Assembly: GCA_965285935.1 (NCBI GenBank)
Contig: OZ260667.1
Location: 50,034,001-50,098,000, forward strand
Length of the DNA: 64,000 nucleotides
From: Ophelia neglecta
Lineage: Eukaryota
Direction: 5' to 3'
The translations under genes and the position numbers were made by a program. Numbering within the stretch: position 1 is the first letter of the stretch; each line of letters starts with the position of its first letter. The notes beneath the pieces were generated by a model. The model ran no database searches, had not been told where the DNA came from, and saw only the letters and a program-made list of their open reading frames with translations. Shown here piece by piece: positions 16,201 through 42,028 of the stretch.

Positions 16201-19200
16201 TGTATACTTGCATAAAAGCCATAAGATATGCTAAGATATGCTTTATCGAGTACTTTTGAACCAGACATTAAATGGTTAATCTTCATGCAGACACAATTAG
16301 CTTATGGTTCAACCATCAGCACGTCTGCTGTGTACTTGATCACGACAATTAAAATGGAGATATGTGTAACACAGGCAACTATCGAATAAGGTAAACAAAT
16401 CAAAAAGAATAGTGTATTTTATGGTAGCTTGTAAAAATGACGTGTTGTCAATGTTTTATTCTCGACTCATAATATCGTATATTCCAGATACAACACAAGT
16501 AGAAGAGGACAACGACAAGGATTCCCTTCCAGACATTCGTGAAGGTAAACTTTTTAGGGTAAACTTTCAATGTCAGTATAAAGCAACCCCCCCCCCCTCA
16601 GTCAAGTGAGGTTTAGCATTAATTTGAAGAGATAGAAGGTGTTGCCAGTTCTGTCCAGTTAATAAAGATCCCTTATCTATCTTCTTAGATCCTTTAAGCA
16701 GTGAATGCATACATCAATACCTAATTCAATTATCTTGTGCGACCGTCTATTCATATTCAATATAATGAAATATTCATATTCAACAGAATTGACATATAAT
16801 GTCTTAGTTATATTTGCTTCAGTGCATATGATATATTATAAATATGAATTCTGGTTTATTTGGTGAGTTCAGTTCGTACCTGGGTACGAGGATTGATAAT
16901 TCTATTTTTCAACACATTTTATGTATTTAATATAATAACTAAAAAAATAATTTGCAAAAAAATAATGTTTGTACTCGCACTTTAAAATTATTGAAGCGTG
17001 ACTCTAACTCAAAATAAATCATACATGAAAACCGTGGCAGTTCCCTGATAAATAGGCAAGAAGACTGTCATACACATTTTAAAGCTTTCCTTATTTTGAT
17101 AAAACCCTAGTTTTTTACAATCCATAGTTTGAGCTTTCATTTTTATTTAGAGACAGTGTATTAAATAGTTTTGTAATAATTAACATGTCATTGCAAGCAA
17201 CCATCTGTACTACACTCTCTTAAATGTGGCCCAAATGTGATCCAAAGGAGCACACAAGAAAGTCAGATATCCTGTTTCCTGGAAGCTGTGATATAAATTT
17301 AAAAATATGTGAACATCTTGAAAACTGTTTCACACATTACAATTTCTGAACTTCGTGATTCTCCTTCAAGCAAAAATGCTCCGACAACAATTATCTTGTC
17401 ATGTTTTACACAAATTGCATTTATATATATTTTATATACAAGAATATTTCTTTGTACCCTGTCTGCCGCAGTTGTTATCTGATCTGGACACGTTGCTCAT
17501 ATAAATTTAACCATAATGCTATTCAATTTCGCTAGGGGGATACAGCAATACATGCTAGGGAAAAAAATTCTTTGCATAAGGTATGTAAACTGCGATGACT
17601 TAACAGTTTGTATTTTCCCTACTGTTGTAAGGTTTCTAGACAGCCATAGTTTGGCTGCTGCACGACACTTTTCTAGTTTTTTAATTCAAAATTCAAAAGT
17701 GGTTAGAACATAATTGGAAATGTGATACTTATCAGTCAAATATATAATAATGGTCATGTCAATTATCGTGGGAATGTTTATTATGTTTATTAGGAAGTGG
17801 ATTGAGCACGGTATGGTATTCATATAAGATTTATTGTCAAATGGTGTGCCTTATTATTATACCATTACCCCTTATCAAATAAGTCACATCCTAGAGGTGT
17901 GTCAAGGCAGTTGTATGTATGTGCACTTGGCCTGTAGGTGCGAAACAGAATACGTATGGCAAAAAGACATGAAATATCACTCTATACTATGAAATCTTCT
18001 TATGAGTTACTGTAGCATTTTGTCGGCTGTGGTGGAACACACCTGTCAAACATTGTCAGAAATTTGTAAAGTGAAGAACGAAATATTAAAGCAGTAAATG
18101 GCGAATATACTCTAAGGCTTGTAAAACATAGTGTGTTTAATTGACTAACCTTTGAAAGAGGGAAGTAACTGATGTCTAAATGGTTTACCCAGGTATTCGA
18201 AGAAGGGCTACGCAATAAAATAACTAAAATACTTTATATCTTTGCATACTTGCAAGTATGAAGGCGACAAACCACAATAATACACATGTTAGCATCAAAC
18301 ATATGTTCGAATCAGACGGCAATTGACATTTTACATTGTTTATTATCACATACATAATATGAGTAAGATGATATGCCAATAGCTATTCACATCATTTATA
18401 ATTCCATGAGTCCGAGGTTGTTCATTGTTATGGGGTTCCCTATTTAAAAGATTGTTGATAATTTCCTATTGCAAAGATAAGTTCATATTTTAGCTTTATT
18501 GTCATTCAACAACTTATATCCTTACTTGAGAGAATTTTGTCACGATTGCACATTAACTCTTTCCAGTAAAAGAGGAAAAGAAAATGTAATTGACAGCATC
18601 GAACAATTCGTGCGAATTAACCATCTTCGTACATTGTCTTCTTTTCGCCTACAGGGAACTCAAGAGGATTCATTCAGAACAGTGGAATTGAATCGAGCTT
18701 CGATCAGATCACATGTCAAGCAAATATCAATCGTTCAAACGTCAAACAGTTGAGAAGCCTGATAAAACAGGACTCTGAAACTATCACGAACTCTTTTCGC
18801 CATGATGGGAAATTGGCAGAAGTAAGGAGCGTAACCAGAGACACTGGGCAAAATACTGACAACACCAACAGTATGGAAGTCGAATATTCTACCAGCATTG
18901 TAAAGAAATCTTCTGCATTGAAACCTACGTTCCGCAATCCTATTGTACTTGAAAGCAAAGAACAAGCTTTCAATGTTGAAGATATTCTAAGAATATTAGA
19001 TATCGAAAAGTATCATCCGAGCAAAATCAGTCTACAGCAAATCATGTCTATTTTAGTCGAACCAATCAAAAGCTACGGTCCAATACAAGTTTGTCCCTTA
19101 GCCTATTTAAGCCACTTACTAATGTTAGATTTTAGAACGAGGGATTTTTTATTACCACAACAAACTGGCGAGCAAACGAACATTTCTAACCAAATTCAAA

Positions 19201-22200
19201 GTATTTTTAACACGAATAATTTAAGTGTGGGTCGGTTCCATCCGCAAGATTTGTTTCTTCTTTTTTTCCAATGTTGTGATCTACCCCTGCGGCAGGTGCT
19301 AATGGCAAAATGTTTTTTGTGTCGATTAGCAATTCCGTTTATTTCCCCTGTGAATGATAAACTAGAATGCGCAATTTGGTCCTTGCGCAATATAGTCATT
19401 AATTATAAAACTGAGAAAAATAAAACTATCGAAAATAGTGTGCTAACCACGGAGCTGGATATCATAGGATTTTGTAGGGTACACGACATCCCAAATCTCT
19501 CCAAGTCCAAACTTCTGAATGAACTACTCAGCGAAAGCGCCCACCCTACATTTTACCATCGTGACTGTCTTGGAGGAAAGACCCAACGTCTAGTCTCCAA
19601 TGGGATAATAGAAGCATCCTGGTACCTACCCTCGGGAATATATAGCGATGTATTCAAAAGGTGCACTATGTTTTTGAACCTTCGTGGGGATTGCTTAGAG
19701 CATGAAAGGCAGGTCAGCATTATAAACAAAATTGCATCTATCACAGTATTATTTGTGAATGTCGAGGAATTGGCTGAACTTAAGATATGTAACGCGATAA
19801 AAGGCTTCATGCGAAATACGCTTACTATTTTGGTGATTAGCTATCAGGATAAAATGGAGATGAACAATCAGTTTGCTATAGATTTAAGACAAGAAAATGA
19901 ACGGCCGCTCAGTATTATATATACATTTACTGATGGCATGAAAAAAGATGCTTCCCAAATAAGAAAAGAAGTCCAGTCGTCGATTGACAACTATCTCACA
20001 CACAATGTGAACAGAAATACACTCGAAGCGTGTATAAAAGGTTTTCGTGAAGAGCATTGTATCATCGACGAAGATAACACTTTCTGCGAAGAGGGAAGGC
20101 AATGTGCCGATAAACTGTTTCGTTACATATGCAAAACGCCAACGAACATAGAAAGTGATATCCTTCCAATGCAAGAAGATCCCCGAAATAGATCGAAAAA
20201 GCCACAAAAAGCTGTAAAGGAGGAACGGAAGTGTACAGCTAGGGAAGACACGGACATATTGCAAATCATAATGGTTAATGCTATAGGTGACCAACTAGAA
20301 AGTTGCAAAACATCACACGATCGTCTTGATACATTCACCCAGATTATAGGAAATTTATCCACCACACACTTGTTGCCGTTCTCTCTCTGTTGGATAAAAT
20401 TATATTTTGATCGGCATTCACGTGACAACTTGCCATCATTGCGTCGTGCGTTTTACGACAATTGGAGAGAATTCCAGGAAGCTAAAAGAACAAATGATGT
20501 CCTTAATCTAAACAACAAAAGGGAGACAATGCATTTGGCTGAAAAATCTATTTTCGACGCCTCTTTTGGCCTAGAGCATCTTATCAGAAATTTGGGACAA
20601 ACGTACGAAGCAGGCTTTGAGAAAAAATCACAAGACATTGTGAGAAATAGGCTTGATGATCTTTCCGTGACAGTTGCACACATGTTGATCGGCGGACAAC
20701 CGTTTGAATTGATGGACGGGGACGCTGGAAACATTCCAATTAAATGGGTAAAGGCAATATTTACCAGTCTGGAGAATATACTGGGACAAAGCAGGGTCTT
20801 TATTGTAACCGTTCTCGGAATACAGAGCTCGGGGAAATCCACTTTGTTAAATACAATGTTCGGCGTACAGTTTTCCGTAAGTGCAGGTAGATGCACGCGA
20901 GGCATTTATATGCAAATGTTAAGAGTAGACAAAAAAAATTCGGACCTGCAGTTTGATTATGTTCTCGTCCTTGACACAGAAGGATTGAGAGCTCCAGAAT
21001 ATGAACCTCAGAATTACTACTATGATAATAAAATGGCGACTCTAGCTATTGGCCTCGGTGATGTAACCATGGTTAACATTAAAGGAGAAAATTATGCAGA
21101 ATTGAAAGATGTGTTCCAATCGGCAGTTCATGCATTTCTTCGACTGAAACATGTCACAGAAATTAATACAAGTCGCCGAAGATGGATATTTATTCACCAG
21201 AATGTACCTGCTATTAATGCAGAGGCCAAATTGCGGCATGGTTGTCAAAAGCTACTAGAGTGTCTCGACGACATGGCCCCGGACGCAGCATTACTAGAAG
21301 ACAGCCCCTGTAGCATCAGACGATTTTCTGATATAATAGATTTTGATTGTTTTTCTGATGTATGGTTCCTTCCAGGTCTTTGGAATGGTGATCCACCGAT
21401 GGCCCACCCCAACATTGGCTATATTGAAAAAGTTAAACTCCTCAAAAATGAAATAATCCAAGTTTCGAAAAGACGTAAATCATTTCTTCGTTTATGTGAT
21501 TTTTTCCAAACCATTGAAGGTCTTTGGGAAGGTATACAGTGTGATGACATTTTTAATTACCAGAATTTCAGAGTTCACAAAGCATACAATAATTCTGACA
21601 ACATGGTCATAAACATACAGCGGAATCTGGAACAAGATGTGAACCCGTTCATGAAGACACGTACCGAAACCCTTACGAGCTCCCGTGGAAGTCACGAAGA
21701 AGCCAGACAGTGTGGAATAAATTTGAATGCCGAACTACGAAATATCATTGACACACAGAGCAGAAAAAGAACAAAGTTACTGGCGGCATATTTTGACAGT
21801 AGTCCTTATGCAGACTACATTGCCCAATATCATGGTCAAAAAATACAAACTCTCAAATTATACACATTGGACTTGCTGGCTGATAAGAAATGTGCACTGA
21901 AGGTTTGTCAGTATGCCTTAACATTTTGTAATTTGCTAAAATGGAAAGAGTGCCAACAAAATCGTTCAACACAAAATGAAGCCCCTGTAGAATTCAGAGT
22001 TCGTATATGGGAGGGGATCATTGATCAGTTGATGTCTTCTTTTCCAGAACATGTAAAAATCGCATTAAACCAGCTTGATCAATGCCGAATACATTCAAGG
22101 TCCTATACCGGTAACCTGCAGTTTGATAATGTTCTCGTCCTTGACACAGAAGGATTGAGAGCTCCAGAATATGAACCTCAGAACTACAACCATGATAATA

Positions 22201-23963
22201 AAATGGCGACTCTAGCTATTGGCCTTGGTGATGTAACCATGGTTAACATTAAAGGAGAAAATTATGCAGAATTGAAAGATGTCTTCCAATCGGCAGTTCA
22301 TGCATTTCCTCGACTGAAACATGTCACAGAAATTAATATAAGTCGCCGAAGATGGATATTTGTTCACCAGAATGTACCTGCTATTAATGCAGAGGCCAAA
22401 TTGCGGCATGGTTGTCAAAAGCTACTAGCGTGTCTCGACGACATGGCCCCGGACGCAACAATACTAGAAGACAGCCCCTGCAGCATCAGACGATTTTCTG
22501 ATATAATAGATTTTGATTGTTCTTCCGATGTATGGTTCCTTCCAGGACTTTGGAATGGTGATCCACCGATGGCCCACCCCAACATTGGCTATATTGAAAA
22601 TGATAAACTCCTCAAAAATGAAATAATCCAAGTTTCAAAAAGACGTAAATCATTTCTTCGTTTATGTGATTTTTTCCAAACCATTGAAGGTCTTTGGGAA
22701 GGTATACAGTCTGATAACATTTTTGATTACCAGAATTTCAGAGTTCACAAAGCATACAATAATTCTGACAACATGGTCATAAACATACAGCGGAATCTGG
22801 AACAAGATGTGAACCCGTTCATGAAGACACGTACCGAAACCCTTATGAGCTCCTGTGGAAGTCACGAAGAAGCCAGACAGTGTGGAATAAATTTGAATGC
22901 CGAACTACGAAATATCATTGACACACAGAGCAGAAAAAGAACAAAGTTACTGGCGGCATATTTTGACAGTAGTCCTTATGCAGACTATATTGCCCAATAT
23001 CATGGTCAAAAAATACAAGCTCTCAAATTATACACATTGGACTGGCTGGCTTATAAGAAATTTGCACTGAAGGTTTGTCAGTATGCCTTAACATTTTGTA
23101 ATTGGCTAAAATGGAAAGAGTGCCAACAAAATCTTTCAACACAAAATGAGGCCCCTGTAGAATTCAGAGTTCGTATATGGGAGGGGATCAGTGATCAATT
23201 GATGTCTTCTTTTCTCGTATTAAACCAGCTTGATCAATGCCGAATACATTCAAGGTCCTATACCGGTAAGCTGGAAGTTAGCATAGAAATATATGTTATC
23301 AGCAAAGAGGAGGGCCATTTCACAGTGACCACAGCCCAAAAGCAGAAAAAGAAACTGGCGAAAGAAAAATTAGAAAAATTTAGTACATGCATTCTCTCAA
23401 AGCATTTCAATCAAAACTTGAGAAACGCCGACATTTATTTGCAAGATTTACAAATGACCGACAATTTCCTCACACCCAATATAACAGATGACCATATAAT
23501 GGAGCTAATAGCAAAGGCCACGAAACACCAGACTCCGTTATGCAGAAGCGAAGCATCAAACTATGAAATAAAAATCTTCCCCCCCTGGAAAATTAAAATT
23601 GCTCTGAAGGTTTGTCCATACAAAAGAAACCTTGGGCAAGAATGCGCTCAACTGGAAAATATTTACAAAAGTTTGACAACCGAAACAGTAAAATGGGAAG
23701 AGAAGATCGTATATGTGCCAATATTGGAAAAATTATGGGGTTGTGGGACTGTATGTCATTTCTGCTTAGAACCATGTCTTTGTAGCGAATGTCAGCACAA
23801 CGATAGAATGCCTCAAAAGTGTATACAGCAAAGACCTGGAGGAATCGTCGGGCGCTTTTCAAAAGACAACGACAAGTTGGTTATTACAGCGTGTAATAAA
23901 TGTGTTCTAACGGAAAATTCAGAATGCACTGAGAAATCCCCAAATGATCCCCAGCTGATCTAA
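13279..23963 (+). CDS. GVIN1: VLIG-A: SAM-domain very large inducible GTPase (GVIN1/URGCP family), ~1906 aa; exons 13279-13633, 16488-16544, 18655-23963; rearranged, possibly decaying
   Basis: SAM-like exon (FDSWVKKYEF..LTLADVKELRLTMGQRKTL). Phase-1 junctions are all in frame, although the exon-1 donor GTTATT is weak. Motifs: G1 GIQSSGKS (20817), G2 GRCTRG, G3 DTEGL (20973), FIHQNV, PFELMDGD, C-terminal GCxxxCxFCxxPC. Symbol is family-level only. Confidence 0.85.
15468..15792. mobile_element. Foldback/MITE-like element with ~63-bp inverted arms
   Basis: 15468-15530 (ATTTTCTACC..TTCATGAATTTCTGCTTTC..TTGTAGAAAGA) is the near reverse complement of 15729-15792. Confidence 0.65.
20944..23268 (+). 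repeat. In-frame 1170-bp intragenic tandem duplication in VLIG-A
   Basis: ACCTGCAGTTTGAT starts at 20944 and 22114. The copies are nearly identical; the second has a 15-bp deletion. Confidence 0.97.
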
Positions 23964-31383: not shown

Positions 31384-31642
31384 ATGGCCCACAGGACAGA
31401 AGACATGTCCGATTGGTTTGATTTTGATTCTTGGGCTGTTGAATATAAACTCACAAAGAAAACAATTTGCCGTCTTCGAGAAGAGGATTTAAATACGGTT
31501 AATGTTTTACGTGAACTGGAGCCAGAAGACATAAAAGAACTAAATCTGAACTTAGGAGAACGCAAGCTTTTGTTGCTCGCGGTTGATAGCTTAAGAAATG
31601 GCACTAAGGATAACATCGAAGACACCCAGAGAGATTTGACAG
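31384..31642 (+). CDS. SAM-domain first exon of VLIG-B
   Basis: FDFDSWAVEYKLTKKTICRLREEDLNTVNVLRELEPEDIKELNLNLGERKLL; strong donor AG|GTAATT; paralogous to exon 13279-13633. Confidence 0.85.
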
Positions 31643-34600
31643 GTAATTAACGGCAGCATTCATATACATGTATTTACTTGCATGCAGCATACATACATGA
31701 AAGCCCTTAGGAAATGTATCGTAGTTTTGTTTTAAATTTTAGGTGCACATTTTGTTGCTTAAAGTGGACAAGTGATTTGATTACGTAACATGCGTGTTTT
31801 TCTGTAGCAAATATTAAGAAAATCCTATGTCCCCATCGGAACTATTTTCTGACATTTTAACATGTGTAAATGTAATTTTCTTCAACGGTATTCCTTCCTA
31901 TTGTCGCACATTTTAACATTTGGAAACATGAAATTCACTTTTAATTAATAATATAGCAACACGCGTTAAATGTGCCGACGATGACTGGCTGATGACTAGC
32001 TGTTCAGATCGGAGACTCAAATAAACTGCTCGTGATCTTCGACCCTCGTCGAAAGCACCTCGTGCAAAAAATGTAGGACTGGGTCCAATTAGTTGCCACA
32101 CTTAGAACCCTTTGAGTATATTAACAAGGCATGTGCAATCACAAGGACGGATTTGCGTGTTGTGTGATTATTGATTACTTATATAAATATCCCCCCCAAA
32201 CCCCCCCCCCCCCCCCACACACACACACACACACCCGCACACACACTCAACTTAGGGCAAATCACGCATTTGGTATGTTTCGTAATTAGTGATAGTGTTA
32301 ACAAAAATATTCAATTTCGACTGAAATTGTCATATATGAGCTGTTTATAAAGCGATTTTGACAGTATTTGGAAGGAATCTGGACTGTTCCTGATATGACG
32401 AAGCTCCGTATCCCACGGATAAACATTTAATTGGTTCTATTTCTACTGCTTTGAATCCAATGTAATAGCTAGAGAAACGGGCAAGCAGTCACTAGCCAAT
32501 GTCCAAGATATCCCCTTAATTATAATCAAACAATGTGCAAATGACCGACGTTTGTTTTCACCAACAGTCCTGCCGGCCGCTTGTTCTTGGCGTGGACGTG
32601 CTTCGGACGGGCAATGCTATATACACGTCCATATATACGCTACGGGCGATATGCTTTATACCGCTCACAGCGGTTCCTCCCACACGGGCCGTACAGATAT
32701 ATTTAAAAAAAAGTGCTGGCCACCTATATTGTTGTGTATAATGTCCGTTTAATGGCCGGTTGAACATACACATGCTTTCAAGTCAAGTAGTATTATACAC
32801 TTATATATTGCAGCCTCTGAAGAAGTGTCTTTTGATGCAATGCCCCGCCCCGTACCCTGGAATGGCTGCCACGCAGGAATTGAAATGATCAACACGTGCG
32901 CTGTTGATAATATGTTATATTTTTTCCACGTCTTACAACTTCAAAGAGATGACATGAGAACAGACTTTGCCAAAAGTGAAGAACAGGCCCTTAGGCTACT
33001 TTATGAAGTACACACCTGCTTTAAAGATAGTAGATTTTCCGAAGGCAAATATCTTTGGCTAAAACAATTTTTTTCAGTTGACTCTAATTTGAAAGAATGG
33101 GATGCATTTGGGCATGAAAGCAAGTATTCATTCTCTAAACTGCAGACAATCTTAAAATCATCATTCAACAGCACGTGTTCAGAAACAGGCTCTTGCAGTC
33201 AACCAGAGAAAATATTACATTCAACAATAATCGAAAGCAGGTATGTAAAATTTTATTATCTGTTTTCCAAATAAGGGCAGAGTATCTTGGTCTTGTGTAA
33301 TTTCATTATTTTCGATAGTTTATTTATGCGTGTTAATGTTTTTTTTTATAAAGAGAACTTATAAACTATAGCTGTAATTGTGATAAAAAAAATTGCCAAT
33401 TTAACAAATACCAGTTGAAAATTTATTTACTTTTCAACATCAGGGCGCAAATCATAAATCCTCAAAAGCCCCCACTACTAGTGGTACTATTGACTTTTGA
33501 TTTTTAAAATACTAGAAGCCAGGAACATGGGTCTAAAGATTTTGCAAATGGAGTCGAAACGTGGGTGATGAACAATCCCCAAACCAAATGCGGCTATAAA
33601 GAAAAAAATTCCGAACGACAGTATGTACTTGAACATATTAAACAAATATAATACTGATGCGCACATGTAAGAGAGAATGAGTTTTTAACCCCGCCTTCAA
33701 TTCTTGCTATAGCATTGAAAAACAGTATGTTGTTTAATTCCTTTTTTCAGGTGCGTTGGTGTTAGGAAAGAAACGCCCAGGAAGTTTAATTCAGAAGAAC
33801 CACCTTTCCTTCTAATTGACCTAGCTTCCTGTGACTGGAAAATATTACCTCTGTCCATGAATGTTCTAAACACAGAGTAAATATATTACCTTCATATTGC
33901 TTATAGTTTTAAATTTTCATTTGTTACATTTCAGCGAAAAGAACGGTTTTCTAAAACATATTATTATTCCTCTCATTTTCTGAAGTTTAGCAATTTCAAA
34001 ATGGCCATGCCTCTGACGAGTTTCATGGTGAATTGACTTCCCAGGAATCAATTTTTTTTTTAATCTACCCGTTTCATTGGGTCTACCTGGAGAAAAACAA
34101 CCGCACCTTTTTACCATTTCCTTCCACGCAGAAATAAAGATGGGTCGATTTTCGCTGAAATGCAATGTCCATGTAAATAAGCCAAAAATAACTCTATCAA
34201 ATCTTTTGGTTGAGTCTTTTGACACTGGATCGGAAGATGACTCACAAAAAGCAAAATATTGTTATTTTAAGCTGTATGAATCAAATTTAAAAGAAATTAA
34301 AGAATTAATTTTAAAGAAATGTTTGCAAAGCTATTTATGCTTTTGTTTGGACCAGAGGAATTTATCCAAACTTTTAAAGCAAATTTCCTTGCCACTTGTA
34401 TGCTGTAACCAGCTCAGTGGGTTTTTTTAATTATATATGGGATCTTTGAAAATGGTCTAGTAATTCTAAATTTCTTCTCTCTCCATAAATTTCTCACCAA
34501 AAATTGAAAAGTTTGATTCCCAAGGCTCCTAAAGATCTAAAATTTAGAGCGTCGGGGAAGATTTTACGAGTCGCAATATATTATGCTTATCTCTTTGAAT

Positions 34601-37600
34601 TATTCATATCTTAATGCCCAAATAAAATATAAGCAACCTGAAGTATGGTGAAGGAATATATTGCCTTTGTCATGAAATTGGAAATAAGCTTGCATGGAAC
34701 ATTCCTCAAGTTTATTAAGTCTTTTAAATGAGCAAAAGATGTAAAGAAATAGAAAAGAAGATAGTTCGCTTGAAACTGTCATGGACGGTTGAAGATGTGA
34801 GTGAGTTGTTGATAATATCCGTAAACCATGGAACCAGATCATCTAAGCAGCCCTTGAGGAGCCATATCGGCAGTGGATCTGCATCACATGACTTGGGGGA
34901 CAGCATGTTATCAGTTTATGCACCTCGGCTTGTGTGAGTAGTGCAAATTGTGGGAATGAAGTTTGCATTTTTTTGGGGGGACCACATACTGCCATATTCT
35001 TGAACGCTCAGTGAGATTGCCATATACACGAAGTTCATTTACATACTTACTAAATCATAAGTGTTTAGCGTATGTATATATGGCTGCTCATGGTTTCAGT
35101 ACTCATACATTTACATAAATTTAACAGTTATTTAATTGAACTTATTTTGTAATTCAGATACTCCCTCAAGATGATTACATATGGTAATAGTACACACTTC
35201 GTTGCTTCCATGAGGTTTCATGCTCAATGGTGGCTGTATGATGGGTATAAGGAGTACAAAAAAAAGGCTACAGGGTTGCAGAAACAGAAAGAGCCATTAC
35301 CCCCAGATGGATACATCAGAAGTTTCTGCGTATATACTAAACTACCTTCAGGTATGTTAAAGTTTGTAAAGGCCTAAGTTTATCATGAGCAGAGAAATTC
35401 CTACTTGTTTCTTCATGTGAAAGAATTTTTAGAGAAGTTTCCATGTTAACCCTCAAAATAAGGTGTTAATAAGTAATAAGAAATTAATTAATGTCATCCA
35501 TGTTTCGACATTCTGTATGATGATTGAACAAAGTTAATAAGTGATTTTGATCCACACAAAAATATACAGTGATGTGAAAAGACTAAAACAGGGTCAGGGT
35601 TATTGGTTATAGTCAATGTTACTTAAATAATTTCTGAAACGCCCTTCAAAGACTGAAAACGTTGGGGCAGTCTTTATGTACTTCTTAACGTAGTGAAAAC
35701 GCCCACACGAGGAAGAGCTTCTCCAAATAACGTGTCATACTGCACGCAGCGGGTCTTACATTTCACCTCTCCGGTCTATTGGCCTCTTTATTCACCAATA
35801 GACTGACCTTGTCATATTGTCAGGCTAAGACCTTAGTAAAGCATTTGACAAGGTCAGCCACCAACACCTGCTGCTGTTCTTAATGGTGAATTTTCAGAGG
35901 ACATCCGAGTAACCTCGGGTGTTCCACCGGGCTCTGTACTAGCCCTGTTCTATTATTGATTTATATTAATTACCTTTCTGACCACATTAGACACAGCAGG
36001 GTTCGGGTCTTTGCCGACTACGCCATTTTTTACCAAAGCATATAATTTTCTCAAGATATTCTCCTGATACATCAAGACCCCTCAGGCGATGGGGGTCTGA
36101 CTTGCACATGCATTTTAACCCTTCAAAGTATCACCCTGCATGTCTACAGACGGAAGCATTAAGGTCACAGCGACGCTTATTCCCTCCAAAACACTTCCCC
36201 GCTGAAGTAGTGGACAATGCCAAATGCCGAGGGTTTACTGTCCACAACAAACTTAGTTGGAATGACCATGTGAATGAGATAAGTGGCAAGGCGAGCAGGC
36301 ATGTTGAGTAGGAAGCTAAAGCCTGCTCTCCGTAAGATCAAAGAGCAGGCAAAACCGTCTATAATTTAATATAATAAATTAAAACCATTCTACTAAAAAT
36401 ATAAAATGTGTTAGATAATCCGTCGGTATTCACTTATTTCGGTATTCGGTATTCACCTGAATACCGAATAAGAAAGAACATTCTGATGAATAGGTATGAG
36501 CGATTCGGGCAAGCTATTTCATAGTTCTGGCGCTACTCGCACGTAGCTAATTTGCCGGATGTCTCTTACCTCTTACGTGGGACATTGAGAAGAAATTTCT
36601 TCTCGGACCTGAGTGATCGATTAACTATCTGCATCTGAAGAAGGTCGGCATCCTACATTGGCGCGTGTCCATTTAAGGTCTTATAAGTCATGAGCATCAC
36701 TTTGTATGCAACATGATGATGTACGTGCAACTTATGAAGCTGTTAAGATAGCGTTAATTCGAGCATAACGAGGCGTTTATAACAGTAGCAGCAATGCTCT
36801 GCAATATCTGCCAGCGCTCGACAAAAGCCTTCAATATTCCAGATAAGAAAATATCGCCATAAATAGTTATATAGTTATATAAGTTACCATCCTACCCATA
36901 CTAATTATATTAACTATAAAAATCGTTCTCGTTTCCACCCGTAGGTGACTTAAGACGAAGCATGGAGGGTCATGGCATAGATGTAGACTATTGGCAGGCC
37001 ATATTTCATGAACAACTAGAAATTTCAGCTATGAAACAGTTGAGTCATTTGACACAAAAGGAATTTAAAACGCTCGCAAGTTGTAGTCGCTCTGCGTTTG
37101 AACTGATATCTTTAAAGACAATGATCAAAGAAGCGGGGGGCATTATTTTTCATAATAATAGTAATGTTAATATTGAGGGCATATTGAAGGAACTCAATAT
37201 GGAAGAGTTTCATCCTGGAAAAATAAGTTTACCGCAAGTAATGTCAGTCATGACCGAGCCAACGAAAGGTCTAGCTCAATCTACATTTTGCCCATTAGTC
37301 TATTTGCATAATTTAATCATGTTAGGCTACAAAACAAGAGATGCTCATTTGCCAAAGCCACATAGTGAACAATCTGAAACTTCAAAGCAAACAACAGGAA
37401 TTAAAAGTGTTCTTAGCACGTGTAAATCAGGTGTAAGTGACTTCCACCCTCAGGATGTATTTCTGATGGTATTCCAATGCTGTAATCTACACTTGAGGCA
37501 GGTCCTAATGAAAAAATGTTTCTTGTGTCGATTAGCAATACCTTTTATTTCTCCTATGAATGGGAACCTTGAATGCGCAATTTGGTCGTTACGCAGTATA

Positions 37601-40600
37601 GTCGCTTATTACAAAAATGCAGAAAAAATAAATGTACAAAATGTTATTGTGAACGCCAGCCTGCACATCATAGGATTTTGCAGAATTAAAAGCAACAAAA
37701 ATCACTCAAAGTCCAAACTGTTAAATGAGTTGCTCAGCGACAGCGCCCACCCTACATTTTACCATCGTGACTGTCCACAAGGTATGACCAAACGTCTAGT
37801 CTCCAATGGAATGATAGAAGCATCCTGGTACCTACCTTCTGGGACCGATAGCGATTTATTCAAAACATGTACTATGTTTCTTAACCTTCGTGGGGATTGC
37901 TTAGAGCATAAACGGCAAGCTGGCATTATGCGCAAAATCGTAGCGGTCACAGTATTGTTTGTGAATGTAGAAGAATTGGGTGATCAAACCATTTGCCAAA
38001 ATATCAATTATTTTGCAAAGAAAACACAAGTTATTTTGGTAATCGGCTCCCAACTTAAGATGTGTAAACAAAAACTAGAACATATTCTTACTCAGTGCAG
38101 TAACCATTTGGGAGAAGAAAACGTAAGTCGACTCTATTTCATCTACACTTCTACCGTCAACATGGGCAAAGATGCTACCCAGATAAATTCCGAAATTCGT
38201 GCTTCGATTTCTGCGTGCCTCACACGTAATAATGTAAATACACTTGAGGCATGTTTAAATGTCTTTCGAGAAAAATGTTGTGACATCGATGAAGATATCA
38301 AAAGTAGCATAGAAGGGAAAATACATGCAGATGACATGCTTCAAAACTTATCTAAAAACACTTTGTCCAAGAAAAGCCTTATGCTGCCACTGCAAGATCT
38401 CTGGTTGCAATGGAGTAAACTTCAACAAAAACAAAGCCGTGCAGTAGGGAAGGGAACCTTAACTACTGCCATGGAAGAGACGGAAGATTTACGAAACGAA
38501 ATGGGCAAAATTAGAAAGGAGCAAGGACGATTATGCACAATTTCCTCCCCACTGGTGAAAAGATTTATCAAGATACTAACTAACGCATTTCGATCAGATG
38601 CCTTCTCAGAAATGACGCCATTCTTTCTCTGTTGGGTGAAATTGTGCCTTGATGGTCGTTCACGGGAAAACTTACAAGAAATGCAGCGTGCGTATGAAGA
38701 AAAGTTGAGAGATTTACAGAAAGTCAAAAACAAAAGAGACTTTACTGTGACTGGAGAAAAGGAGGCAATGCAGTTGGCAGAAAAACAACTTGTCGGTGCC
38801 TCTTTTGGCCTGGAACATCTTTTTAGGGAATTAGGGCAAATGTACGAAGCGGTTGCCGAGCATAAGACCAACGTTCAAGACATCATGAGAAAACAGCTGA
38901 ATGAAATGCCCATTATTGTTGCCCACATCTTGATAGGCGGGCAACCATTTGAATTGATGGACGGGGACGCCGGGAACATTCCAATTAAATGGATGAAAGC
39001 AATATTTACCAGTCTGGAGCATATATTGGGACAAAGCAAAATCTTTGTTGTGTCCGTCCTTGGAATTCAGAGCTCAGGGAAATCCACTCTGTTAAACACA
39101 ATGTTCGGTTTAGAGTTTTCAGTTAGTGCTGGTAGGTGCACGAGAGGCGTTTATATGCAAATGCTCAAGGTAGGAAAAGAATATTCTGACCTACCGTTTG
39201 ACTATGTTCTGGTCATTGATTCAGAAGGACTAAGAGCCCCTGAATTGGGAAAACAGAAATACGACCACGACAATGAAATTGCAACTCTAGTTATTGGCAT
39301 CAGTGATGTGACCATTATTAACGTCAAAGGAGAAAGTTATGCTGAAATGAAAGATATAATCCAAGTGGCCGTTCATGCTTTCCTTCGAATGAAACTTGTC
39401 TCATTTAGTCATACAAATCGCAGAAGGTGTATATTTGTTCACCAAAATGTACCGGCTACGAATGCAGAGGAGGCCATGCGACACGGCAGTCAAAAATTAC
39501 AGGATGGCCTTGACGAAATGGCTCAGGAAGCGGCGTCACAAGAAAATATTCTTGGGATAAACAGCTTTTCTAATATAATTGAGTTCAATTGCTTGTCAGA
39601 TGTGTGGTTTCTCCCCGATCTCTGGCATGGTAACCCGCCTATGGCTCACGTCAACATCGGGTACAGTGAAAAGGTCAAAAATATAAAACGTCAAGTACTG
39701 TTCCAATTTTCAAAAAGCCAAAAATCTTTTCTTAGTCTAGAAGATATTTACCAAAACATTGAAGAACTTTGGAAAGGTATACTATCAGACGACTTCGTGT
39801 TTAGTTTCCGAAATGTAATAGAGCTGAAGGCCTATAGTCATCTTGAAAGCACAATTATTGACATAACTTGGACACTAGAAGAAGAGCTAGACGACTGGCT
39901 AAATACTAAAGCTGAACCCCTAATGGGTTCTTGTCGAAACAACGAAGACGCAAAGAAATGTGGATTAGACTTGAAATCTGAAATAGACTCATTTATACAA
40001 AACAAGGCCGACTTAAATAAAGAAAAGTTGTCGATTTATTTTCTAAATAGCTCATATGCTGACATAATTGAAAAATGGCACGAGCAGAAGAAGAATGTTC
40101 TGCAATCACATTCTTGCGACATGCTCCTAAAAATGAAAGAAGAACTAATGGAATTGCAAACACGACACGAATTGCGATTACTTACCAATGAGAACCACAT
40201 GATACATAAGGACGACATAATGAGCAAAGCCCTCGACGTGGCTCTGGAATTGAAGGGAACTGCCTTAAGTGAAGATGCTTTGAGAGAAAAATTTGATCAC
40301 GTTTGGCTAAGCTGGCAAGCCTGCACTTCAGAAAATAAAATAAATATTATTTCCCCTGGCAACATTTTAAGACAGATGAGTGGCCTATTGTTTTCCCTGT
40401 TCCCACAACACCATCAAATTGTTAAATATCACCTAAACATCAACCCAATAGGAGTTAAAGCTAATTTTTCTCCCTTAGAAAACAGCATAGGAATAATTGA
40501 TATCAGACAGGAAGACGGCTATCTTAGTATCGAAGTTGCTGACTCCATAGACACCTTTTCGGCACAAAGGGAGGTGCTGGAATCAGGTCATCAAGTCGCG

Positions 40601-42028
40601 ATGAACATTATAAATGAGGCTTTAAAAAACGCCGATATTTTTTTGAAAGATTTATGTAAGACAGATACAAAATTCAGCAAGGTTCATGTCAAGAAACTGA
40701 TATCAATGATTCAGAAATGTCCTACTCAAAACATAGGTGAAGGAGAAAAATATAAAATGACTCTTCTTCCCCGGCTGTTAATCAAAGTATCTGTGCTTGT
40801 TTGTCAGTATGCCTACCCAATGTTATGCGAAATGCAGCAGGCATATGAAGAGAACAATAGTTTTTTTCCCATGATCAAGAGATCAACGTGGAAGTTGTTT
40901 AAAAACACTGTCTTGAGTCAGGAAGAAGAATTAGTTGCAGATCTGATTTGTGACTGTTTGCAAGAGCGAATTCGAACAGCTCTAAATGAACGTATCCATA
41001 GGAAAATATATCGACTTCAATCTAGACATTTCAAGACAAAAGCCCGTTTAATGTACAAAGTTTTGCATTCGTTTGCCATAAAGGATAGCTTTGGCACTTT
41101 TGATGGCTACATCCGTTCACCTAAGGAATCTGTTCTTCTGTGGTTGACAGATTACATCAATAAATATTATTTTACCAGGCAGGACTCGAAGCCTTCAAAG
41201 TATGCTGATCTGGCCATCGCGAATCTAAATGAGATAATGCAAAAGGTGCTAGAGAATATGAGCGAGGCCGTAAAGGAGTGTAGAAGTAATCATGCGGATC
41301 ATGACTCATTTATTGATGTGGGAAAATTAATAGATGCGTTCTGTAATTTGGCAAAATATAACATTTCAATCAGTCGGTCACATTTGCAGCACCTGGCACG
41401 TAGAAATATAGCAGACTTGTCAAGTTTTCTCGGGATCTTTAAAACCAAGCTTCAGGCCGAAAGAACGCTTTTGGCAGAATCTTTTACCAGCGTTACATGC
41501 GATACAATAAAGTGGGGAAAAAAGGCGGTAAACATGGCGGTATTGGAAAAACTGTGGGGCTGTGAGGCCATTTGTCCTTTCTGCAACGAACCCTGTCTTT
41601 ATAGCGATCCCAAACACATAGCGGATGACATGCCCCATACTTGTATTCAACACAGACCTGGTGGAGCCTCTGGTTGGCATTGGAAAAGTGACCAAAAATT
41701 GCTGAATACTGCATGTAATTACAATGTTAAACAAAATGCTAGATTTGTTTGCACTAAAGCAACTTGTATAACAAGTAAAACATGTGCAGCCCAATCGCCT
41801 AATATGCCCGTTTATCATCCATACAGGGAGTACAAAACACACCTCCCGGACTGGTCTATATCGCCAGACGAAGATATGGAATCTTCCAAATATTGGCTCT
41901 GGTTCATGGCTCGCTATCAAATTAAGTTAGCAAAAAAATATCATCTTAAACCAGCTCATATTCCCCCTTCCTGGAAGAACATCACGAAAGATGAAGCTAT
42001 AAAAAGCTTAGAAGGTTTTTATCTGTGA
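31384..42028 (+). CDS. GVIN1: VLIG-B: SAM + USP-like cysteine peptidase + very large inducible GTPase (GVIN1/URGCP family), ~2064 aa; exons 31384-31642, 32814-33240, 33516-33620, 33751-33876, 35158-35351, 36945-42028
   Basis: Five GT-AG introns with compatible phases (1,2,2,2,1), giving 6195 nt with no internal stop. The giant exon has a GVIN1-type N-terminal helical motif (GIDVDYWQAIF..LSHL), G1 GIQSSGKS (39062), GRCTRG, DSEGL (39218), FVHQNV and a C-terminal Cys/His cluster. Symbol is family-level only. Confidence 0.85.
32814..35351 (+). CDS. Four-exon USP-like (papain-fold, clan CA) cysteine peptidase module, 284 codons
   Basis: Cys box NTCAVDN (Cys 32897), PPFLLID, YSLKMITYGNSTHF (His 35195), WWLYDG (Asp 35240), terminal SFCVY, and Cys pairs compatible with a finger zinc site. 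Confidence 0.8.
34760..34906 (-). mobile_element. LINE (L2/CR1-like) ORF2 fragment in an intron
   Basis: KSCDADPLPIWLLKGCLDDLVPWFTDIINNSL..FKR resembles the pre-RT region of LINE ORF2. Confidence 0.7.
35820..36350 (+). mobile_element. Degenerate LINE reverse transcriptase fragment in an intron
   Basis: Frameshifted DLSKAFDKVSH, VTSGVPPGSVL, IYIN, FAD and KLSWNDHV motifs. Confidence 0.8.

What the first reader, a model, noticed from the sequence alone, without database searches (positions are those of the whole stretch)
31384..42028. Hidden SAM - USP-like protease - VLIG GTPase fusion gene
Seen: four small exons between the SAM exon and the 5.1-kb VLIG exon have canonical GT-AG sites and consistent phases (31642|32814 ph1, 33240|33516 ph2, 33620|33751 ph2, 33876|35158 ph2, 35351|36945 ph1). 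They give one 2064-aa ORF. The inserted 284 aa carry NTCAVDN, PPFLLID, YSL..I.YG..THF, WWLYDG and FCVY in the order of the Cys box and His box of USP/C19-type deubiquitinases, with Cys, His and Asp intact. Known: VLIG/GVIN1 proteins are immunity-associated large GTPases, and SAM domains mediate oligomerisation. Inference: this is an immune GTPase with a built-in deubiquitinase/Ubl isopeptidase or self-processing protease, possibly activated by SAM/GTPase assembly. I am not aware of this architecture being described, but could not search for it.
Basis: partly seen in the sequence, partly recalled or inferred. Interest (0 to 1): 0.93.

Follow-up and report, generated by a model that had tools for sequence, protein, structure and literature searches.

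The report
USP-like protease cassette inside a giant-GTPase gene
A complete, intact deubiquitinase-like (USP-fold, C14orf28-type) domain sits as four in-frame exons between the SAM exon and the giant VLIG GTPase exon of an invertebrate immune-type gene. Its normal stop codon has been replaced by a strong splice donor, so a protease-GTPase fusion not found in the databases searched is likely, but no RNA data exist to prove it.

Summary
All six exons have GT-AG borders and compatible phases, and they give one open 2064-codon frame.

**What the parts are**
- Exon 6 is a bona fide VLIG/URGCP giant GTPase with an intact P-loop.
- Exon 1 folds as a SAM domain.
- Exons 2-5 tile, without gap or overlap, a complete member of the uncharacterised C14orf28-like family. 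A close homologue folds confidently (pLDDT 90.7) and matches USP18, USP30, USPL1 and USP46 at Z about 15. A family profile hits only USP8 among PDB sequences.
- The Cys, His and Asp residues and the four zinc-ribbon cysteines are all kept.

**Evidence for a fusion (indirect)**
- The copy is 5'-truncated just behind an in-phase acceptor.
- Every relative examined stops 1-9 residues after the last motif. This copy stays open there and carries a consensus donor in the phase the VLIG acceptor needs (about 0.005 expected by chance).
- The VLIG acceptor is conserved in three loci, and its ATG is not.

**Limits**
- No RNA run exists, so cassette skipping (SAM-VLIG) and a short SAM-USP-like isoform ending at TAA 35375-35377 remain possible.
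- None of 108 family representatives carries VLIG domains.

The first-stage scan noted this same stretch twice more. My verdict is a probable new domain architecture built from known parts. Protease activity is untested.

The parts
31384..31642 (+). Exon 1: start codon plus SAM domain (86 codons + 1 nt). Donor CAG|GTAATT, phase 1. Read-through hits a stop 2 codons later.
   Evidence: Pfam SAM_1 is only E 0.12. The AF2 model from 10 genomic paralogues has pLDDT 77 and five helices. The top Foldseek rows are almost all SAM domains (EphB2, SAMSN1, EphA7, ASK3, p73, tankyrase), TM by target 0.65-0.8. A profile hits Caskin, BICC1, SHANK and tankyrase SAMs at E 0.009-0.9.
32814..33240 (+). Exon 2 of the cassette: Cys box (NTCAVDN), helical thumb and first Cys pair of the zinc ribbon. 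Acceptor TTGCAG|CC, phase 1.
   Evidence: 108 relatives in the 1.84-billion-protein library, best 49-54% identity. Homology to the family begins at 32822-32840, 8-26 nt after the acceptor, and there is no N-terminal family region anywhere in the window. It aligns to family columns with T, C, D, N, K, W, E and both Cys kept.
33516..33620 (+). Exon 3 of the cassette: linker helix and third zinc-ribbon Cys.
   Evidence: Tiles the family alignment directly after exon 2. Weak BLAST match to P0017.
33751..33876 (+). Exon 4 of the cassette: fourth Cys (CVGVR), R..F motif, PPFLLID strand.
   Evidence: BLAST to P0018, P0022, P0017 and P0034 at E 1e-5 to 3e-7. Tiles the alignment.
35158..35351 (+). Exon 5 of the cassette: His box (YSL..TYGNSTHF), WWLYDG with the Asp, and the terminal FCVYTK motif. 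It ends in donor CAG|GTATGT, phase 1.
   Evidence: 60% identical to P0018 over 61 aa. The His/Asp region of the family profile aligns to the USP8 His box. The donor matches the consensus at 8 of 9 positions. Only 24 such sites lie on the + strand of 64 kb, giving 0.0045 expected in the right phase within the 36-nt tail.
35375..35377 (+). TAA reached if intron 5 is retained. It would end a 378-aa SAM-USP-like isoform with tail ...CVYTKLPSGMLKFVKA.
   Evidence: No AATAAA or ATTAAA occurs for about 1 kb downstream (first at about 36373).
36945..42028 (+). Exon 6: a 72-aa conserved leader, the URGCP domain (about 37445-38338), the URGCP-like GTPase (about 38462-39667, P-loop GIQSSGKS at 39062-39085), a C-terminal helical region and the stop. 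Acceptor CCCGTAG|GT, phase 1.
   Evidence: Pfam URGCP_GTPase 406 bits and URGCP 194 bits. P-loop and DSEG motif. The acceptor position and phase are shared with the paralogue at 18655 and with L033/L034. The ATG at 36962 aligns to Ile or Leu in those loci.
13279..23963 (+). Tandem paralogue without the cassette: SAM exon (13279 to about 13534) and VLIG exon (18655-23963). It shows the ancestral SAM-to-VLIG junction.
   Evidence: Exon 1 matches 13279-13494 at 46%. Exon 6 matches 18663-21890 at 49%. There are 84 open codons between the acceptor and the first ATG. No e2-e5 match lies between the two exons. Pfam.

Best explanation
This is a lineage-specific gene fusion. A 5'-truncated genomic copy holding only the catalytic domain of a C14orf28-like, USP-fold cysteine isopeptidase gene was captured in the phase-1 intron of a SAM-VLIG giant GTPase gene. 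It kept its three internal introns. It gained an in-phase acceptor at its truncated 5' end. It lost its stop codon to a strong phase-1 donor. The cassette can therefore be spliced SAM -> USP-like -> VLIG to give a 2064-aa protein, and skipping it still gives SAM-VLIG (1780 aa). Shown: the identity and completeness of each domain, the intact Cys/His/Asp and zinc-ribbon residues, the frame compatibility, the stop-to-donor replacement, and the conserved VLIG acceptor. Inferred: that the tri-domain mRNA is made, and that the module cleaves ubiquitin or a ubiquitin-like modifier. Most likely working model: GTP- and SAM-driven assembly of the giant GTPase concentrates the isopeptidase at the assembly site. 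Human GVIN1 forms a coat on cytosolic bacteria (bioRxiv 10.1101/2025.03.24.645074). There the isopeptidase would edit ubiquitin or Ubl marks on the target or on the coat itself.
For: - VLIG identity: Pfam URGCP_GTPase 1.8e-121 and URGCP 4.9e-57, with an intact P-loop.
- SAM fold.
- USP fold: family alignment A1 has invariant T-C-x-x-D-N and His, Tyr-Asp/Asn-Gly and four Cys. Its profile hits only USP8 catalytic domains in the PDB sequence set, E 0.005, aligning the zinc ribbon and His box. The AF2 model of homologue P0018 has pLDDT 90.7. Foldseek's top 40+ listed rows are all USPs, E about 1e-10. VIA-align gives Z 15.5-13.9 over 220-240 residues to USP18, USP30, USPL1, USP35, USP46 and USP7. 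The nearest Atlas cluster is C14orf28, TM 0.79.
- The window's exons tile this domain completely and keep every invariant residue.
- Long-term constraint: the copy is only 43% identical to its closest copies in the same genome and 49-54% to other species' copies, yet it is fully open. Visible polymorphisms in e1-e5 are 6 synonymous and 3 non-synonymous.
- Fusion: family homology starts 8-26 nt after the in-phase acceptor, and no N-terminal family region is present. Eleven relatives' proteins end 1-6 residues beyond the residue aligned to e5 position 61 (one further model, P0083, runs on), and seven genomic copies stop 1-7 residues after the C.Y.K motif. This copy stays open and has CAG|GTATGT five codons after the K, in phase 1 (0.0045 expected by chance).
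- The VLIG acceptor is at the same codon and phase in three loci. The paralogue has no ATG for 84 codons, so the VLIG exon is normally fed by an upstream coding exon.
- No poly(A) signal occurs for about 1 kb after the read-through stop.
Against: - There is no transcript evidence at all. No RNA run holds the stretch, and the three runs found are genomic contigs without splice joints.
- The cassette length is divisible by 3, so it can be skipped.
- A Met at residue 10 of exon 2 and the TAA at 35375-35377 would allow a stand-alone protein of about 283 aa, the size of free relatives such as P0018.
- The e2 acceptor is of ordinary quality (59% pyrimidines), so its phase match is only a one-in-three coincidence.
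- The architecture is unique. No other C14orf28-like copy in this genome has VLIG within 10 kb downstream, none of 108 family representatives has a URGCP domain, and none of 15 VLIG relatives has the module. There is thus no comparative support from another species.
- Pfam's UCH model does not detect the domain.
- The Asn five residues before the catalytic Cys of canonical USPs is Glu here and variable in the family.
- The fold was predicted for a homologue, not for the window's own joined protein.
Confidence: 0.6

Rival explanations
1. There are two products and no tri-domain protein. The cassette is used only in a short SAM-USP-like isoform (378 aa) that retains intron 5 and ends at TAA 35375-35377, or as a nested gene starting at the Met in exon 2. 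The GTPase is made only as SAM-VLIG by skipping the cassette.
For: The relatives' proteins examined end right after the C.Y.K motif, with one exception, so the domain works as a C-terminal or free module. Met at e2 residue 10 and a stop 8 codons past the donor exist. e1 and e6 are in phase with each other, and that junction is the ancestral one. No database protein shows the fusion.
Against: It leaves unexplained why the ancestral stop position is now sense codons followed by one of only 24 top-scoring donors in 64 kb, in exactly the phase of the VLIG acceptor. No canonical poly(A) signal occurs for about 1 kb after the TAA. A nested gene would need its own promoter inside a 1.2-kb intron, and the copy lacks the family's N-terminal region.
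Confidence: 0.27
2. The fusion protein is made, but the USP-like domain is not a protease. It would serve as a ubiquitin/Ubl-binding module or as an integrated decoy that baits pathogen effectors aimed at host deubiquitinases, as in plant NLR integrated domains.
For: The canonical oxyanion Asn at -5 is not conserved. The C14orf28 family has no demonstrated activity (PMC10318531 calls it of unknown function). Catalytically dead USP folds do exist: PAN2 appears among the structural matches at Z 14.1.
Against: Cys, His and Asp/Asn are invariant or nearly so across 14 divergent family members and are kept here. That pattern is typical of active enzymes rather than of binding-only pseudoenzymes.
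Confidence: 0.15
3. The cassette is a decaying gene fragment lying by chance in the intron, and the open frame is a coincidence.
For: It is a 5'-truncated copy. Other copies in this genome are broken (L003, L024, L030, L031).
Against: There are 284 codons over four exons without a stop or frameshift, at 43-54% identity to the nearest relatives. All invariant family residues and all six internal splice sites are intact. Polymorphism is mostly synonymous.
Confidence: 0.04

Closest known systems
C14orf28 (DRIP1) family of uncharacterised USP-fold proteins
   Same: Best structural match of the homologue model (Atlas cluster TM 0.79, 257 residues, rmsd 2.9). One of the exon-2 relatives is named 'C14orf28 homolog' by NCBI (P0110, Mercenaria). 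It shares the N-T-C..D-N Cys box, the four-Cys ribbon, the G.HF/Y His box, the YDG motif and the C.Y.K end. The family was classed computationally as a papain-like deubiquitinase-type domain (PMC10318531).
   Different: Known members are free proteins of about 280-550 aa, or carry the domain at the C-terminal end of proteins of about 1300 aa, and stop right after the domain. Here only the catalytic domain is present, as an internal cassette with its stop replaced by a splice donor, flanked by SAM and VLIG. I did not compare it with the human C14orf28 sequence itself.
Canonical USP/UBP deubiquitinases (MEROPS C19, Pfam PF00443), e.g. USP18, USP46, USP30, USPL1, USP8
   Same: Thumb-palm-fingers fold at Z about 15. 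Cys box, His box and Asp spacing (His to Asp is 16 residues). The zinc-ribbon cysteines align to those of USP8.
   Different: About 10-15% identity. It is below Pfam detection. It is compact at about 280 aa. The oxyanion Asn at -5 is not kept. The substrate (Ub, SUMO as for USPL1, ISG15 as for USP18, or other) is unknown.
VLIG / GVIN1 / URGCP giant GTPases
   Same: URGCP and URGCP_GTPase domains, GxQSSGKS P-loop, one very large coding exon, tandem paralogues. Human GVIN1 forms an antibacterial coat (bioRxiv 10.1101/2025.03.24.645074).
   Different: This is an invertebrate (mollusc-like) member only 35-36% identical to the nearest database proteins. It has an N-terminal SAM exon and, uniquely, a protease-like cassette. 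Nothing is known about its induction or targets.
Integrated enzymatic or decoy domains in immune receptors (plant NLR-IDs, SARM1 SAM-TIR)
   Same: An oligomerising scaffold (SAM, NTPase) joined to an effector or bait domain in one polypeptide. SAM-driven assembly activates the enzyme in SARM1. This comparison rests on my own knowledge.
   Different: There is no homology of the scaffold, and the analogy is untested here.

Membership tests
USP/UBP (MEROPS C19) | Cys box with the catalytic Cys at the start of the thumb helix | tested here: met
   INTCAVDN in exon 2. T-C-x-x-D-N is invariant in 14 family members, and the helix starts at the Cys in the homologue model.
USP/UBP (MEROPS C19) | His box with catalytic His, and Asp/Asn about 16-17 residues later | tested here: met
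   GNSTHF ... WWLYDG in exon 5. His is invariant and Asp is nearly so (Asn in one member). The region aligns to DGGHY ... FDD of USP8.
USP/UBP (MEROPS C19) | Thumb-palm-fingers fold | tested here: met
   Tested on homologue P0018 (48% and 60% identical to exons 2 and 5), which matches USPs at Foldseek E about 1e-10 and VIA Z 15.5-13.9. The window's own joined protein was not folded, by rule.
USP/UBP (MEROPS C19) | Four-Cys zinc ribbon in the fingers | tested here: met
   Two Cys pairs are nearly invariant, present in exons 2, 3 and 4, and aligned to the USP8 ribbon cysteines.
USP/UBP (MEROPS C19) | Reaches the Pfam UCH (PF00443) or UCH_1 gathering score | tested here: not met
   No Pfam hit on any cassette exon or on any of 108 relatives.
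USP/UBP (MEROPS C19) | Oxyanion-hole Asn five residues before the Cys | tested here: not met
   Glu here. The position varies in the family (E, N, K, M, V, T).
USP/UBP (MEROPS C19) | Isopeptidase activity on ubiquitin or a Ubl | not testable with these tools
   Needs activity-based probes or cleavage assays.
C14orf28-like family | Significant sequence similarity to proteins annotated as C14orf28 homologues | tested here: met
   P0110 (C14orf28 homolog, Mercenaria mercenaria) is among the phmmer hits of exon 2, E 1.3e-4. Closer unnamed members reach E 1e-37.
C14orf28-like family | Best structural neighbour is the C14orf28 cluster | tested here: met
   TM 0.79 by query, 257 residues aligned, ahead of giant-virus UCH clusters at 0.62-0.68. 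Feature search score 0.97. Tested on homologue P0018.
C14orf28-like family | Domain ends the protein (stop 1-9 residues after C.Y.K) | tested here: not met
   Relatives and the other copies in this genome stop there. This copy has sense codons and a splice donor instead.
VLIG/GVIN/URGCP giant GTPase | URGCP-like GTPase domain and URGCP domain above the Pfam cut-offs | tested here: met
   406 bits (cut-off 55) and 194 bits (cut-off 27).
VLIG/GVIN/URGCP giant GTPase | Intact G1 and G3 nucleotide-binding motifs | tested here: met
   GIQSSGKS at residue 706 and DSEG at 758 of the exon-6 translation.
VLIG/GVIN/URGCP giant GTPase | Immune or interferon-type induction | not testable with these tools
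   No RNA runs are available for this organism.
SAM domain | Reaches the Pfam SAM_1 or SAM_2 gathering score | tested here: not met
   SAM_1 scores 13.1 bits against a cut-off of 23, E 0.12.
SAM domain | Five-helix SAM fold | tested here: met
   AF2 model with pLDDT 77. Nearly all top Foldseek rows are SAM domains, rmsd 1.5-3 A over 55-70 residues. E-values are weak (0.3-2), as expected for a 60-residue domain.

The most novel reading that the evidence does not exclude
A giant VLIG GTPase that carries its own active USP-fold isopeptidase. SAM- and GTP-driven assembly of the GTPase, for example into a coat on a pathogen or membrane, would deliver or activate a deubiquitinase or Ubl-protease at that site. 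That would be a direct physical link between the two cell-autonomous defence layers, GTPase coats and ubiquitin coats. It would also give the orphan C14orf28 family, which has a human member, its first functional context.
Probability: 0.35. Interest if true: 0.75.

Novelty: new variant of a known kind. Interest (0 to 1): 0.58.

Why it matters
Giant VLIG/GVIN GTPases are the least understood class of immune dynamin-like GTPases. The first mechanism, a GVIN1 coat on Burkholderia, was reported only in 2025. C14orf28 is a conserved animal protein with a USP fold and no known activity or substrate.

A natural fusion of the two would be guilt-by-association evidence that C14orf28-type enzymes act in cell-autonomous defence. 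It would also suggest that ubiquitin or Ubl editing is coupled to GTPase assembly. Both ideas become testable with a single recombinant protein.

The locus also shows the intermediate steps of domain capture side by side:
- a tandem paralogue without the cassette;
- free family copies in the same genome that still carry their stop codon;
- the captured copy, in which that stop has become a splice donor.

If the fusion transcript does not exist, the finding reduces to a nested or alternative-isoform gene of an expanded invertebrate family, which is ordinary.

Tried and rejected
- **RNA evidence.** The look-up of sequencing runs (kind rna) returned only three runs of one sample, none on record as RNA. 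Laid on 31300-37200 they are genomic contigs running through the introns, with no splice joint. The one joint seen, 35654 to 35774, is an intronic 119-nt indel.
- **Pfam on each exon.** Nothing for the cassette, and only a sub-threshold SAM hit.
- **Pfam on 108 family relatives.** Only sporadic NAPRTase_N, PWP3A-B_C and PHD hits, with no immune domains and no URGCP.
- **Long family members.** P0146, an 1852-aa Mactra protein clustered with a family member, turned out to be a tyrosine-phosphatase gene model, not VLIG. P0031 and P0034 (about 1300 aa) have an N-terminal region with no Pfam match.
- **Fused relatives.** None of 15 VLIG homologues has exon 1-5 similarity. No other C14orf28-like copy in the genome has VLIG within 10 kb downstream.
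- **The search for homologous proteins with P0018.** It found only itself because of word-index and length limits.
- **Contigs of the closest relatives.** P0017 and P0018 sit on contigs too short (1.1-1.3 kb) to show neighbours.
- **Literature.** Searches for VLIG/GVIN with USP, SAM or molluscs found no description of such a fusion.
- **Transposable-element origin of the cassette.** Considered because L002 and L003 lie next to reverse-transcriptase fragments. I judged it unlikely: the genome holds few copies, the intron positions are conserved with L012 from another species, and the copies are deeply diverged.
- **Joined model.** By rule it was neither searched nor folded. I joined the six pieces only once, in a script, to check that the frame is open. 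All searches used single exons by reference or database homologues.

Full report
**1. Observation**

The six proposed exons are exactly as described. Every intron begins with GT and ends with AG. The phases are 1, 2, 2, 2, 1. The pieces add up to 6195 nt, which is 2064 codons and a stop with no internal stop. The four small exons total 852 nt, exactly 284 codons. I joined the pieces once, in a script, only to check that the frame is open. Every search used single exons by reference or database homologues.

The window is G000:C12:50034001-50098000 of a 762-Mb, 223-contig genome. The nearest VLIG proteins in the databases are bivalve ones (Mytilus, Ruditapes) at only about 35% identity. The organism is therefore probably a mollusc or another lophotrochozoan with no close relative in the collections.

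**2. The flanking domains**

Exon 6 (1693 aa) is an unambiguous VLIG/URGCP giant GTPase.
- URGCP_GTPase scores 406 bits and URGCP scores 194 bits.
- The P-loop GIQSSGKS and the DSEG motif are intact.

Exon 1 reaches only E 0.12 on Pfam SAM_1. The genome holds ten such exons.
- A profile built from them hits Caskin, BICC1, SHANK, ASK3 and tankyrase SAM domains.
- An AF2 model (pLDDT 77) has five helices.
- Its top Foldseek rows are almost all SAM domains, at rmsd 1.5-3 A.

I accept exon 1 as a SAM fold.

**3. The 284-aa insert**

Exon 2 alone finds 108 representatives in the 1.84-billion-protein library, the best at 49-54% identity. These are unnamed or "uncharacterized" proteins of bivalves, fish and metagenome-borne animals. 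One is named "C14orf28 homolog" by NCBI. None has a Pfam family covering this domain.

An alignment of 14 complete members shows these conserved features:
- an invariant T-C-x-x-D-N;
- an invariant His;
- Tyr-Asp/Asn-Gly;
- four nearly invariant Cys.

A profile of this alignment, searched against all PDB sequences, hits only USP8 catalytic domains (E 0.005). It aligns the two Cys pairs to the USP8 zinc ribbon and the G.HF ... YDG stretch to the USP8 His box.

Homologue P0018 is 283 aa, and is 48% and 60% identical to exons 2 and 5. It folds with pLDDT 90.7.
- Foldseek returns USPs only in its listed top rows, at E about 1e-10.
- VIA-align gives Z 15.5-13.9 over 220-240 residues for USP18, USP30, USPL1, USP35, USP46, USP12, USP7 and USP14.
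- In the ESM Atlas the nearest cluster is C14orf28 (TM 0.79), ahead of giant-virus UCH proteins.

A 2023 survey had already classed human C14orf28 as a papain-like, deubiquitinase-type domain of unknown function (PMC10318531).

Added one by one to the family alignment, exons 2, 3, 4 and 5 tile the whole domain with no gap or overlap, and they keep every invariant residue. This also verifies the three internal introns. The e2/e3 and e4/e5 boundaries coincide with exon boundaries in the family gene of another species (L012). So the cassette arose from a genomic copy, not a retrocopy.

Two departures from canonical USPs remain:
- the Pfam UCH model does not detect the domain;
- the Asn five residues before the Cys is Glu here and variable across the family.

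**4. Is it one gene?**

No RNA is available. The three public runs that hold the stretch are genomic contigs without splice joints. The case for a single gene is therefore indirect. It rests on five observations.

(a) *The ancestral junction is SAM to VLIG.*
- The tandem paralogue in the window has a SAM exon at 13279 and a VLIG exon whose acceptor (18655) lies at the same codon and phase as 36945.
- That paralogue has 84 open, homologous codons before its first ATG, and no cassette.
- Two further loci (L033, L034) pair a SAM exon with an exon homologous to the first 72 residues of exon 6, again with the acceptor at the same codon and phase.
- The ATG at 36962 aligns to Ile or Leu in those loci, so it is not a conserved start.
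- Exon 1 hits a stop two codons past its donor, so it must be spliced.

(b) *The cassette is a 5'-truncated copy.* Homology to the family begins 8-26 nt after the acceptor at 32814. The N-terminal region present in other copies (L002, L012, P0028, P0034) is absent from the window.

(c) *It has been kept open for a long time.*
- It is 43% identical to its nearest copies in the same genome and about 50% to other species' copies, yet has no stop or frameshift. Several other genomic copies are broken.
- Of the nine polymorphisms listed inside exons 1-5, six are synonymous.

(d) *The ancestral stop has been replaced by a donor.*
- Eleven relatives' proteins end 1-6 residues beyond the residue aligned to e5 position 61 (one further model, P0083, runs on), and seven genomic copies (six in this genome plus L012) stop 1-7 residues after the C.Y.K motif.
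- This copy reads ...CVYTKLPS and then CAG|GTATGT in phase 1, the phase the VLIG acceptor requires.
- Only 24 sites on the + strand of the 64-kb window match the donor consensus at 8 of 9 positions or better, and three of them are the donors of exons 1, 2 and 5.
- The expectation for such a site, in the right phase, within the 36-nt tail is 0.0045.

(e) *There is no nearby poly(A) signal.* No AATAAA or ATTAAA follows the read-through stop (TAA 35375-35377) for about 1 kb.

Three points count against the fusion:
- The e2 acceptor is unremarkable.
- A Met at residue 10 of exon 2 together with that TAA could give a free protein of about 283 aa.
- The cassette can be skipped in frame.

I put the existence of SAM-USP-like-VLIG transcripts at about 0.6-0.65. 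Cassette skipping probably occurs as well.

**5. How it most likely works**

*Shown.* The locus combines an oligomerisation-type SAM domain, a complete USP-fold module with its catalytic residues in place, and a giant dynamin/GBP-like GTPase.

*Inferred.* GTPase and SAM assembly would concentrate the isopeptidase where the GTPase assembles. There it would remove or trim ubiquitin or a ubiquitin-like modifier on the target or on the assembly itself. Human GVIN1 forms a coat on cytosolic Burkholderia (bioRxiv 10.1101/2025.03.24.645074).

The structural ties with USP18 (ISG15-specific) and USPL1 (SUMO-specific) are within noise of the other USPs. They say nothing about substrate.

Two alternatives remain: a non-catalytic binding or decoy module, and separate products.

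**6. Novelty**

Each part is known. The C14orf28-type domain is known only from computation. The combination was not found anywhere I could look:
- none of the 108 family representatives carries a URGCP domain;
- none of 15 VLIG relatives carries the module;
- no other family copy in this genome has VLIG within 10 kb downstream;
- no paper found describes it.

I did not run a full architecture search of eukaryotic protein databases, so absence elsewhere is not proven. Two other first-stage notes of this scan cover the same stretch: the phase 1-1 cassette (s1-734151) and the tandem SAM-VLIG pair (s1-734204). My checks agree with both.

**7. Verdict**

The fusion is probable but unproven, and its activity is unknown. 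I class it as a new variant of known kinds and score its interest as moderate to high.

Noticed in passing
window 13279-23963 (+): Tandem paralogue of the gene, with a SAM exon and a 5.3-kb VLIG exon (49% identical) but no cassette. Pfam reports two stretches of the URGCP GTPase domain, and a second BLAST segment overlaps the first, which suggests an internal duplication in its GTPase region.
   Followed up: partly
L033 (G000:C12:46809541-46819540) and L034 (G000:C12:46900703-46910702): Two near-identical loci pair a SAM-like exon with an exon homologous only to the first ~70 residues of the VLIG exon, with no VLIG body within 10 kb. The 70-residue leader therefore looks like a separate module that travels with the SAM exon. 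Its fold was not tested.
   Followed up: partly
G000:C5:28.87-28.95 Mb (L017-L019), C7:44.93 Mb, C1:120.68 Mb, C5:33.47 Mb: Further SAM-like exons of the same type, including a cluster of three on contig 5. No VLIG match lies within 10 kb downstream, so they belong to other genes or have longer introns.
   Followed up: partly
L002 / L003 (G000:C12:67.56 Mb and 74.20 Mb): Two nearly identical, oppositely oriented copies of a full-type C14orf28-like gene. Each has a long ORF on the opposite strand overlapping its 5' part and a reverse-transcriptase fragment nearby. One copy carries a stop and a deletion in the His-box exon. This may be a segmental duplication or transposon-mediated.
   Followed up: no
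window 43605-44024 (+): ATG-started 139-aa ORF with a THAP zinc-finger domain (Pfam E 6e-12) just downstream of the VLIG gene. It may be transposase-derived.
   Followed up: no
window 54329-54763 (-): Exon encoding a fibrinogen C-terminal globular domain (Pfam E 2e-34). This is a fibrinogen-related protein gene, another family often expanded in mollusc immunity, next to the VLIG pair.
   Followed up: no
contig of P0034 (ENA ERZ25070167, 18 kb): An intronless 1313-aa family member whose nearest neighbour, on the opposite strand, is a 370-aa protein with a tankyrase-type SAM domain. This is a second, independent SAM/C14orf28-like neighbourhood in another organism.
   Followed up: no
window 35654-35774: All three genomic runs contain a form lacking 119 nt of intron 5, and contigs break at 35626 and 35798. 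This points to a polymorphic indel or repeat in the intron.
   Followed up: no
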